Source: Octopus sinensis
Taxonomy: Eukaryota
Assembly: GCF_006345805.1 (NCBI RefSeq)
Contig: NW_021829129.1
Location: forward strand, 1-7,002
Reading direction: 5' to 3'
DNA length: 7,002 nt
Below, in pieces: positions 145-336 of this stretch (positions within the stretch are counted from its first letter, which is position 1; the number at the start of each line of letters is the position of its first letter). Under the pieces are notes generated by a model. It was not told where the DNA came from, did no database searches, and worked only from the letters and a program-made list of their open reading frames with translations. Both the position numbers and the translations under genes were made by a program.

Positions 145-290
145 TATATATTTTATTATTATTTAATTAATTAATTAATTTTTAAAGAAATATAACTATC
201 AAAAAGTATGAAAAGTTTAATACAAGATAAAGAGTAAAACCCTACGATCGTTTCATGCCCCATAACCAATTCGAATAACAATAATTTAAT
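144..290 (-). repeat. Left inverted arm (inverted pseudo-LTR copy)
   Basis: 188-286 aligns to the reverse complement of 2192-2291 with 6 differences in 100 columns (5 substitutions, 1 indel). Similarity continues through the AT-rich (TTA)n/(TTAA)n tail to gtatatatttt at 144-154, which pairs with 2329-2339. Confidence 0.95.
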
Positions 291-336
291 TCAATTATAA
301 TTCGAATTATGGTTATAGTCAATCTTCAGGTTAATT
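236..336 (-). ncRNA. Type I hammerhead ribozyme, PLE-type with palindromic stem III and partly degenerate stems
   Basis: Minus strand reads: CTGAAGA (329-323) = conserved CUGANGA; a hairpin with arms 321-300 and 276-256 (~20 bp, few bulges or mismatches) = stem II; GAAA (254-251); stem III palindrome ACGATCGT (251-244); cleavage triplet GUA (245-243). Stem I (330-336 with 242-236) is weak and mismatched. Confidence 0.72.

What the first reader, a model, noticed from the sequence alone, without database searches (positions are those of the whole stretch)
236..336. Hidden hammerhead ribozyme on the minus strand of the left inverted arm
Seen: CUGAAGA (329-323), a ~20-bp hairpin (321-300 with 276-256), GAAA (254-251), the self-complementary octamer ACGATCGT and a GUA triplet occur in exact type I hammerhead order, and the catalytic-core nucleotides are intact. 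Established: Penelope-like elements carry minimal type I hammerheads in their pseudo-LTRs, and the short palindromic stem III is completed by dimerisation of two copies. Inference: this is a self-cleaving RNA motif of an octopus PLE family, preserved inside ~85% AT DNA that otherwise looks featureless. Stem I is degenerate here (AATTAAC against GGGTTTT; the right arm's GTGGTT implies an ancestral AACCAC), so this copy may be weak or inactive.
Basis: partly seen in the sequence, partly recalled or inferred. Interest (0 to 1): 0.85.

Follow-up and report, generated by a model that had tools for sequence, protein, structure and literature searches.

The report
Degenerate hammerhead-like motif in AT-rich repeat

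Summary
On the minus strand, CUGAAGA (329-323), a 22-bp hairpin (318-260), GAAA (254-251), the palindrome ACGAUCGU (251-244) and GUA (245-243) stand in type I hammerhead order.

An arrangement at least this good arose in 1 to 32 of 40,000 shuffled windows, depending on the palindrome length required.

The motif fails every objective hammerhead test:
- Rfam gives no hammerhead match, even at E<=10 on 121 bases.
- Two covariance models built from four published, cleavage-tested animal hammerheads do not report it.
- Helix I has 3 of 7 pairs.
- Helix II starts with U.U and an A.G mismatch.
- The hammerhead fold lies 12.6 kcal/mol above the minimum-energy fold.

The right inverted arm breaks off inside the hairpin loop and lacks CUGANGA. 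No reverse transcriptase or endonuclease lies between the arms, and there is no tandem repeat.

Its helix III (GAAACGAUCGUA) matches published mussel and axolotl retrozyme hammerheads. The axolotl one also has U.U and GUA.

No other genomic copy could be fetched, so family conservation is untested.

Verdict: probably a decayed, inactive relic of a type I hammerhead from a Penelope-like or retrozyme-like repeat (0.5). A chance look-alike on a palindrome remains plausible (0.35). Interest is modest.

The parts
236..336 (-). Whole hammerhead-like motif in type I order: helix I 5' strand, CUGAAGA, long helix II, GAAA, helix III palindrome, GUA, helix I 3' strand.
   Evidence: Searches give the coordinates. 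One search shows 1 to 32 of 40,000 shuffled windows reach an equal arrangement.
330..336 (-). Putative helix I 5' strand, AAUUAAC.
   Evidence: only 3 of 7 positions pair with GGGUUUU, and only C-G is contiguous with the core.
323..329 (-). CUGAAGA box (C3 to A9, with N7 = A).
   Evidence: It is one of 3 CTGANGA sites in the window, where 2.2 are expected by chance.
255..322 (-). Putative helix II. The stable interrupted hairpin of 22 bp spans 318-260, with its loop at 293-283. The base next to the core reads U.U, U-A, G-C, A.G, C-G, U.G plus a bulged G.
   Evidence: -20.0 kcal/mol; outermost stable pair 4 and 5 nt from the boxes.
251..254 (-). GAAA box (G12 A13 A14 A15.1).
244..251 (-). Helix III: the self-complementary octamer ACGAUCGU. 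As a monomer it gives 2 bp plus the tetraloop GAUC. Between two copies it would give an 8-bp helix.
   Evidence: The same layout occurs in mussel GAAACGCGCGUC and axolotl GAAACACGUGUA.
243..245 (-). GUA triplet. The predicted scissile bond lies between 243 and 242.
   Evidence: Cleavage itself is inferred and was not tested.
236..242 (-). Putative helix I 3' strand, GGGUUUU.
140..290 (-). Left inverted arm: the part of the repeat that is shared with the right arm.
   Evidence: about 91% identity.
2187..2339 (+). Right inverted arm, a 5'-truncated half copy. It starts inside the helix II loop and carries GAAACGATCGTA at 2224-2235. It has no CUGANGA and no 5' strand of helix II.
   Evidence: One search finds no homology 5' of position 2187 (1476 of 2000 shuffles score at least as well).
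346..2186 (.). AT-rich spacer between the arms. GC is 14-27%, there is no credible reading frame, and there is no significant internal copy of the motif.

Best explanation
This is a decayed relic of a type I hammerhead ribozyme that once belonged to a retroelement-derived repeat, either a Penelope-like-element terminal repeat or a retrozyme-like non-autonomous element. It sits in the longer arm of a head-to-head inverted duplication.

In the active ancestor (inferred), minus-strand transcripts holding two or more units would pair their ACGAUCGU palindromes into an extended helix III. That would assemble the CUGANGA/GAAA core, and the RNA would cut itself 3' of GUA, releasing unit-length RNA.

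In this copy helix I is lost and the base of helix II is mismatched. A rod-like alternative fold sequesters C3, U4, G8, A9 and the palindrome. The only second copy is on the other strand and lacks the 5' half. The motif is therefore most likely inactive now.

Shown: the motif, its non-random arrangement, the structural defects and the truncated inverted copy. Inferred: retroelement origin, former catalysis and present inactivity.
For: - The core letters stand in type I order at the stated coordinates.
- The joint arrangement is rare in shuffles: 1 to 32 of 40,000.
- Helix III is 2 bp plus a palindromic tetraloop, which the literature describes as typical of invertebrate hammerheads that act as dimers.
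- The layout GAAA-CG-NN-CG-U-H equals that of the validated mussel retrozyme hammerhead GAAACGCGCGUC. The validated axolotl Ax353 hammerhead has both a U.U at the base of helix II and a GUA site followed by a G-rich then U-rich strand (UGGGGUUGC, against GGGUUUUAC here).
- The arms are inverted and head-to-head, with one copy 5'-truncated, as described for PLE insertions.
- The low GC content fits non-LTR retrozymes.
- PLEs are an abundant and old component of octopus genomes, at Jukes-Cantor distance about 0.2. This fits a decayed copy only if the window is cephalopod, which was not tested.
Against: - No hammerhead family of Rfam matches, at gathering score or at E<=10 on 401 or 121 bases.
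- Covariance models R1 and R2, built from four published cleavage-tested type I hammerheads, do not report the motif. R2 scores the two boxes only separately, at 2.7 and 2.8 bits.
- Helix I has 3 of 7 pairs, 10.1-11.1 is U.U, and an A.G mismatch and a bulge follow.
- The hammerhead-compatible fold is -14.3 against -26.9 kcal/mol for the minimum-energy fold, about 1e-9 of the ensemble.
- A helix II of more than 22 bp is far longer than the 4 bp of canonical or the 6-8 bp of PLE hammerheads.
- There is no reverse transcriptase or endonuclease and no tandem units.
- No second full copy exists to show conservation, and none could be fetched.
Confidence: 0.5

Rival explanations
1. This is a chance look-alike. 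The region is simply a long imperfect AT-rich palindrome at the inner end of an inverted repeat, such as a fold-back or non-autonomous DNA element, or a DNA-level inverted duplication. CUGAAGA and GAAA happen to flank it, and no RNA catalysis was ever involved.
For: - The minimum-energy fold is one continuous rod. AACCU pairs with GGGUU, GAUUG pairs with CGAUC, and the 22-bp hairpin sits between them, so the 'core' letters lie inside an extended palindrome.
- All model-based hammerhead tests are negative.
- The boxes alone occur in 7% of shuffled windows. A better-scoring box-level look-alike sits at 3388-3437 in the same window.
- There is no retroelement protein nearby.
- The right arm starts at the centre of the palindrome, a typical breakpoint for DNA-level fold-back events (inference).
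Against: - The combination of boxes, an adjacent strong hairpin and an 8-nt palindrome starting exactly at A15.1 and followed by H arose in only 1 of 40,000 shuffled windows, or 32 of 40,000 with any palindrome of at least 4 nt.
- The helix III layout and the U.U and GUA details coincide with validated animal hammerheads.
Confidence: 0.35
2. This is a currently functional, atypical type I hammerhead with a greatly extended helix II. It cleaves minus-strand transcripts between 243 and 242 in vivo, helped by dimerisation with another copy in trans or by protein chaperones.
For: - The core is intact.
- PLE hammerheads in general show very low activity in vitro and are thought to need partners or cofactors. 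The Drosophila virilis variant has a 2-bp helix I.
- The axolotl HHR_Amex2, which has U.U at the base of helix II, cleaves 22% in an hour as a monomer and efficiently as a dimer.
- Both CpG-containing copies of the palindrome are intact in arms that differ by about 9%.
Against: - The hammerhead fold lies 12.6 kcal/mol above the minimum-energy fold.
- Helix I is practically absent and two defects sit at the base of helix II.
- There is no same-strand partner in the window.
- In a transcript that spans both arms, the roughly 150-nt arms would pair with each other and bury the 3' half (inference).
Confidence: 0.1
3. The hairpin is a small-RNA precursor, such as a microRNA-like or hairpin-RNA locus, and the hammerhead boxes are irrelevant.
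For: It is a stable 22-bp hairpin with a z-score of -3.9. There are weak, non-significant matches to several mir families at E of 0.9 to 7.
Against: All Rfam scores are far below gathering thresholds (13-14 bits against 60-100). The hairpin is part of a repeated inverted arm, and no conservation data exist.
Confidence: 0.05

Closest known systems
Minimal type I hammerheads of Penelope-like elements (Cervera & de la Pena 2014, PMC4209133)
   Same: - Type I order.
- A short helix III with a palindromic 15.2-16.2 and loop 3, implying action as a dimer.
- A weak and short helix I.
- A helix II longer than canonical.
- Occurrence as solitary or oppositely oriented pairs in decayed copies.
- An inverted 5'-truncated partner.
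   Different: - No reverse transcriptase or GIY-YIG reading frame and no recognisable terminal direct repeat.
- 10.1-11.1 is U.U instead of the highly conserved G-C.
- Helix II has more than 22 bp rather than 6-8.
- The surrounding DNA is 75-85% AT and non-coding.
Type I hammerheads of animal non-LTR retrozymes: mussel Mg353 and axolotl HHR_Amex2/Ax353 (Cervera & de la Pena 2020, PMC7229834)
   Same: - Helix III layout: GAAACGAUCGUA here, against mussel GAAACGCGCGUC and axolotl GAAACACGUGUA.
- A U.U mismatch at the base of helix II, a GUA site and a G-rich 3' strand of helix I, as in Ax353.
- A low-GC host repeat.
   Different: - Retrozymes are head-to-tail tandem repeats of 170-400 nt with a 6-bp helix I and a 3-4-bp helix II.
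- Here there is no significant tandem unit, helix I is lost and helix II is about 68 nt long.
- Covariance models built from those sequences do not report this motif.
Fold-back or long-inverted-repeat non-autonomous elements (generic class; from general knowledge)
   Same: Two arms of roughly 150 nt, about 91% identical and in inverted orientation, around a non-coding AT-rich spacer. A long palindrome lies at the inner end of one arm.
   Different: No terminal inverted-repeat ends with target-site duplications could be defined. The left outer end abuts a SINE-like sequence at about 143. The hammerhead-order boxes are not explained by this class.

Membership tests
Hammerhead ribozyme, type I | Conserved core CUGANGA ... 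GAAA ... UH in type I order. | tested here: met
   CUGAAGA 329-323, GAAA 254-251, U16.1 at 244, A17 at 243.
Hammerhead ribozyme, type I | Helix II closes directly on the core with a Watson-Crick 10.1-11.1 pair (usually G-C). | tested here: not met
   Read from the sequence: U.U at 10.1-11.1, followed by U-A, G-C, A.G. The thermodynamically stable hairpin starts 4 and 5 nt away from the core. A natural active precedent for U.U exists in axolotl HHR_Amex2.
Hammerhead ribozyme, type I | Helix I of about 4-6 bp formed by the flanks. | tested here: not met
   3 of 7 positions pair, and only 1 is contiguous with the core.
Hammerhead ribozyme, type I | Helix III, or a palindromic substitute that allows dimeric assembly. 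| tested here: met
   ACGAUCGU is perfectly self-complementary. The same layout occurs in validated mussel and axolotl hammerheads.
Hammerhead ribozyme, type I | Match to curated or purpose-built covariance models. | tested here: not met
   Rfam gives no hammerhead match at gathering score or at E<=10. R1 and R2, built from 4 validated hammerheads, give no match at E<=10 in the window. The two halves score 2.7 and 2.8 bits separately. Caveat: these models penalise the 68-nt helix II heavily.
Hammerhead ribozyme, type I | The catalytic fold is energetically accessible. | tested here: not met
   -14.3 kcal/mol for the hammerhead-compatible fold against -26.9 for the minimum-energy fold, about 1e-9 of the ensemble. 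Tertiary contacts are not modelled.
Hammerhead ribozyme, type I | Site-specific self-cleavage. | not testable with these tools
   This needs in vitro transcription or RNA end mapping.
Hammerhead ribozyme, type I | Conservation of the core and covariation of the helices across family copies. | not testable with these tools
   No copy outside the window could be fetched. The only other copy, the right arm, lacks the 5' half.
Penelope-like element terminal-repeat hammerhead | The motif lies in a terminal repeat flanking a reverse transcriptase (plus or minus GIY-YIG endonuclease) reading frame. | tested here: not met
   There is no credible reading frame in 130-2560. The only reverse-transcriptase remnant (5990-6520) is 3.6 kb away and aligns with a protein that has the pattern I know from non-LTR elements (the classification rests on my own knowledge).
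Penelope-like element terminal-repeat hammerhead | An unpaired nucleotide between A9 and 10.1, and a conserved G10.1-C11.1 pair. | tested here: inconclusive
   The U after A9 can be read either as that bulge or as half of a U.U mismatch. No G-C pair follows in either register (sequence; criteria).
Penelope-like element terminal-repeat hammerhead | Partial tandem or inverted 5'-truncated copies at the insertion. | tested here: met
   The arms are head-to-head and inverted, and the right one is truncated at 2187.
Non-LTR retrozyme | Head-to-tail tandem repeats of about 170-400 nt, each with a type I hammerhead. | tested here: not met
   No significant direct copy of the motif or unit occurs in 346-2178 or 2340-2600. 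Weak hints appear only at 2449-2520 (p of 0.02-0.04 with flat scoring, not significant with composition-aware scoring).
Non-LTR retrozyme | Low GC content (below 45%). | tested here: met
   (GC 15-25%); the criterion comes.

The most novel reading that the evidence does not exclude
The motif represents a new cephalopod family of AT-rich, non-coding elements of about 2 kb, mobilised by Penelope-like elements. Its type I hammerhead would carry an exceptionally long helix II of about 25 bp and still cleave in vivo as a dimer or with cofactors. It would be the first hammerhead family described in cephalopods, since no open paper in the searched library reports one.
Probability: 0.08. Interest if true: 0.5.

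Novelty: new member of a known kind. Interest (0 to 1): 0.25.

Why it matters
If the family consensus proves to be an intact hammerhead, this would add cephalopods to the animals whose repeats carry type I hammerheads. It would also show a variant with a very long helix II, and give a handle on how Penelope-like elements mobilise non-coding passengers.

As it stands, the case is mainly a caution. In AT-rich, palindrome-rich DNA the hammerhead boxes alone are cheap: they appear in 7% of shuffled windows. A single degenerate copy cannot establish a ribozyme.

Tried and rejected
1. **Rfam.** I scanned the whole window at gathering score, and 100-500 and 225-345 at E<=10. There was no hammerhead match, only noise hits to snoRNA and mir families.
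2. **Own covariance models.** I built two from four published validated hammerheads, one with helix I (R1) and one without (R2). The candidate is not reported. R2's best hits are other chance sites.
3. **Search for other copies.**
   - A translated-repeat trick against 5.8 billion proteins gave nothing.
   - The 18-mer GGCATGAAACGATCGTAG in metagenome, viral and prokaryote genome collections gave only chance matches in GC-rich bacterial DNA.
   - Exact look-ups of 14 window reading frames found none on record.
   - The last two homology searches returned one short JGI contig and one 557-nt contig of GCA_040777385.1.
4. **Internal tandem or extra partial copies.** Low-stringency self-BLAST gave AT-rich noise. 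Local alignments with shuffle controls were not significant. Similarity at 2449-2520 was marginal. The 12-mer ATTGACTATAAC at 544-555 is not significant.
5. **Homology of the right arm beyond its breakpoint.** There is none.
6. **Mitochondrial or tRNA content of the AT-rich block.** No tRNA was found.
7. **Flanking fragments.** Pfam gave only weak helix-turn-helix hits at the window's end. A Protein Data Bank sequence search with P0001 was uninformative.
8. **Supplements.** Those of the two key PLE papers are not held.

Full report
**Observation.** Reading the minus strand from 336 to 236 gives AAUUAAC-CUGAAGA-[68 nt]-GAAA-CGAUCG-U-A-GGGUUUU.
- All invariant hammerhead core letters are present. 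The order is that of a type I hammerhead, and the predicted scissile bond lies between 243 and 242.
- The 68 nt between the boxes fold into an interrupted 22-bp hairpin of -20.0 kcal/mol, spanning 318-260 with its loop at 293-283.

**Is it more than chance?** CTGANGA occurs 3 times in the window, where 2.2 are expected. I shuffled the window in 500-nt blocks, preserving dinucleotides, and scanned both strands.
- The boxes alone (CUGANGA, 8-100 nt, GAA, a self-complementary A...T stretch, then H) occur in 7% of shuffled windows for palindromes of at least 4 nt, and in 0.6% for at least 8 nt.
- Adding a hairpin between the boxes of at most -20 kcal/mol, ending within 4 and 5 nt of them, leaves 32 of 40,000 (palindrome >=4) and 1 of 40,000 (palindrome >=8).
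- The arrangement is therefore non-random for a single window. By inference, a genome of a few gigabases would still hold tens to hundreds of accidental examples, so one copy cannot carry the claim.
- A box-level look-alike at 3388-3437 (-) scores better than the candidate with my own model.

**Structural quality.**
- Helix I is nearly absent: 3 of 7 pairs, with only C2.1-G1.1 contiguous with the core.
- At the base of helix II, 10.1-11.1 is U.U. Then come U-A, G-C, A.G, C-G, U.G and a bulged G before the stable hairpin begins (sequence).
- The minimum-energy fold (-26.9 kcal/mol, z = -3.9) is not a hammerhead. AACCU (including C3 and U4) pairs with GGGUU, and GAUUG (G8, A9) pairs with CGAUC of the palindrome, giving one long rod.
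- Forcing the core free and helices I to III as a hammerhead costs 12.6 kcal/mol (-14.3 kcal/mol, about 1e-9 of the ensemble).
- No hammerhead family of Rfam 15 matches, at gathering score on the window or at E<=10 on 401 or 121 bases.
- I built two covariance models from four published, cleavage-tested animal type I hammerheads: coral Amil224, mussel Mg353, and axolotl Ax353 and Ax330. The sequences come from the supplement of PMC7229834. One model includes helix I and the other omits it.
- With filters off, neither model reports the candidate at E<=10 in the window. On 225-345 alone, the two halves score separately at 2.7 and 2.8 bits and are not joined.
- These models are unforgiving of a 68-nt helix II. 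The negative result therefore shows non-membership by standard criteria, not impossibility.

**Context.**
- The motif lies in the left arm of an inverted repeat: 140-290 (minus sense) against 2187-2339 (plus), about 91% identical.
- The arms are head-to-head, so the RNA-sense 3' ends point outward.
- The right arm begins inside the helix II loop. It carries GAAACGATCGTA (2224-2235) followed by GTGGTTTTAC, but neither CUGANGA nor the 5' strand of helix II. Nothing 5' of 2187 is homologous to the left arm (1476 of 2000 shuffles score at least as well).
- The 1.84 kb between the arms has 14-27% GC and no credible reading frame, tRNA or internal copy of the motif.
- The left arm's outer end abuts, at about 143, a GC-normal sequence that I recognise from memory as the 3' end of an abundant octopus SINE. 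This was not tested. If it is right, the arm may continue beyond the window.
- AT-rich DNA continues to about 2560 on the right.
- The only protein remnants are far away. One is a decayed reverse-transcriptase C-terminal fragment at 5990-6520, 42% identical to a JGI protein with a Pfam RVT_1 domain. I class it as non-LTR type from memory. The other is a helix-turn-helix, transposase-like N-terminus at 6710-7002.

**Comparison with the literature.**
- Cervera & de la Pena 2014 (PMC4209133) define the minimal hammerheads of Penelope-like elements (PLEs) by several traits: a helix III of 1-2 bp with a palindromic loop, so that two copies form the active dimer; a helix II of 6-8 bp; a helix I of 4-5 bp (2 bp in Drosophila virilis); an extra nucleotide between A9 and 10.1; a conserved G10.1-C11.1 pair; and families rich in covariation. 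They also note pairs of motifs on opposite strands and very low activity in vitro.
- Craig et al. 2021 (PMC8557442) describe inverted 5'-truncated copies next to PLE insertions.
- Cervera & de la Pena 2020 (PMC7229834) show that canonical animal type I hammerheads live in low-GC tandem repeats called non-LTR retrozymes.
  - Invertebrate versions have a 2-bp helix III capped by a tetraloop.
  - The roughly 60,000 axolotl HHR_Amex2 motifs have a U.U mismatch at the base of helix II. They still cleave 22% in an hour as monomers and efficiently as dimers.
  - Their printed sequences make the resemblance concrete:
    - mussel: CUGAUGA-GUC...GAC-GAAACGCGCGUC|UGGCGU
    - axolotl Ax353: CUGAUGA-U-GCC...GGC-U-GAAACACGUGUA|UGGGGUUGC
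    - this window: CUGAAGA-U-UGAC...GGCA-U-GAAACGAUCGUA|GGGUUUUAC
  - Helix III, the U.U mismatch and the GUA site all have validated precedents. The very long helix II and the missing helix I do not.
- PLEs are abundant in octopus genomes, with an old burst at Jukes-Cantor distance about 0.2 (PMC13282606, PMC8967140). This would suit a decayed copy.
- No open paper in the library reports hammerheads in cephalopods.

**Family evidence could not be obtained.**
- No cephalopod DNA is reachable with the tools.
- A translated-repeat search found nothing.
- The conserved 18-mer gave only chance hits in bacterial or metagenomic DNA.
- None of 14 window reading frames is on record.
- The remaining homology searches returned two short, unrelated contigs.

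**Most likely explanation.**
- The motif is a decayed relic of a type I hammerhead from a retroelement-derived repeat, PLE-terminal-repeat-like or retrozyme-like, caught in a head-to-head inverted duplication. My confidence is 0.5.
- The inferred ancestral mechanism is as follows. Multimeric minus-strand transcripts pair their ACGAUCGU palindromes into an 8-bp helix III, the core assembles, and the RNA is cut 3' of GUA to release unit-length RNA.
- The present copy is probably dead. Helix I is lost, the base of helix II is defective, the competing rod fold is favoured by 12.6 kcal/mol, and the only other copy is on the opposite strand without its 5' half.
- In a transcript that spans both arms, the arms would pair with each other and bury the 3' half (inference).

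**Rivals.**
- A chance look-alike on an AT-rich palindrome belonging to a fold-back or DNA-level inverted repeat (0.35).
- A still-active atypical hammerhead (0.1).
- A small-RNA hairpin (0.05).

**Novelty and interest.** Type I hammerheads in animal repeats are known in thousands to more than 10^5 copies per genome. A degenerate copy is at most a new member of a known kind. Interest is 0.25. The most novel reading not excluded is an active long-helix-II hammerhead family of a PLE-dependent non-coding element in cephalopods, with probability about 0.08.

Noticed in passing
window 1-142 (+): A GC-normal sequence ends in ...GACTGAAACAATAAAAGAGTAAAGAG and abuts the left arm's outer end. From memory it looks like the 3' end of an abundant octopus tRNA-derived SINE. 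If so, it may have split the arm, whose continuation would lie outside the window.
   Followed up: no
window 5990-6520 (+): A decayed reverse-transcriptase C-terminal fragment with 4 in-frame stops, including the motif LLYGAETWT. It is 42% identical over 170 aa to P0001, a JGI protein with Pfam RVT_1. From my own knowledge it looks like a non-LTR (LINE) remnant rather than a Penelope-like one.
   Followed up: partly
window 6710-7002 (+): A helix-turn-helix, transposase-like N-terminal fragment. Pfam hits to HTH_23 and HTH_29 are weak and below cut-off. It is 65% identical to the 59-aa protein P0002, encoded on a 557-nt contig of assembly GCA_040777385.1.
   Followed up: partly
window 1800-2030, 2620-2647, 3520-3580, 4330-4520, 4660-5700: Dense microsatellites: (TA)n, (CA)n, (TACA)n, (GT)n, (CT)n and long (CTAT)n/(CCAT)n arrays. 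They inflate the rate of chance hairpins in shuffles of this window.
   Followed up: no
window 3388-3437 (-): CUGAUGA-21 nt-GAAACA-13 nt-GUU is the best hit of my covariance model without helix I (7.2 bits, E 0.81). It is a chance box-level hammerhead look-alike and shows that the boxes alone are not diagnostic.
   Followed up: partly
window 2449-2520 (+): This stretch weakly resembles both arms. It includes the exact 11-mer TAGTGGTTTTA (also at 2234-2244) and ATTGGTTTATG...TTTTCAG. The p-value is 0.02-0.04 with flat scoring and not significant with composition-aware scoring. It may be a third, much more decayed partial copy about 265 nt downstream of the right arm's start.
   Followed up: partly
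window 544-555 (-): The exact 12-mer ATTGACTATAAC, which is the start of the helix II 5' strand at 323-312, recurs 232 nt upstream on the same strand. It is not significant against shuffles.
   Followed up: partly
window 256-321 and 2202-2211: The hairpin and arms contain several short restriction-site-like palindromes: AATTCGAATT twice in the left hairpin and CGATCG in both arms. Both CpG-containing CGATCG copies are intact although the arms differ by about 9%.
   Followed up: no
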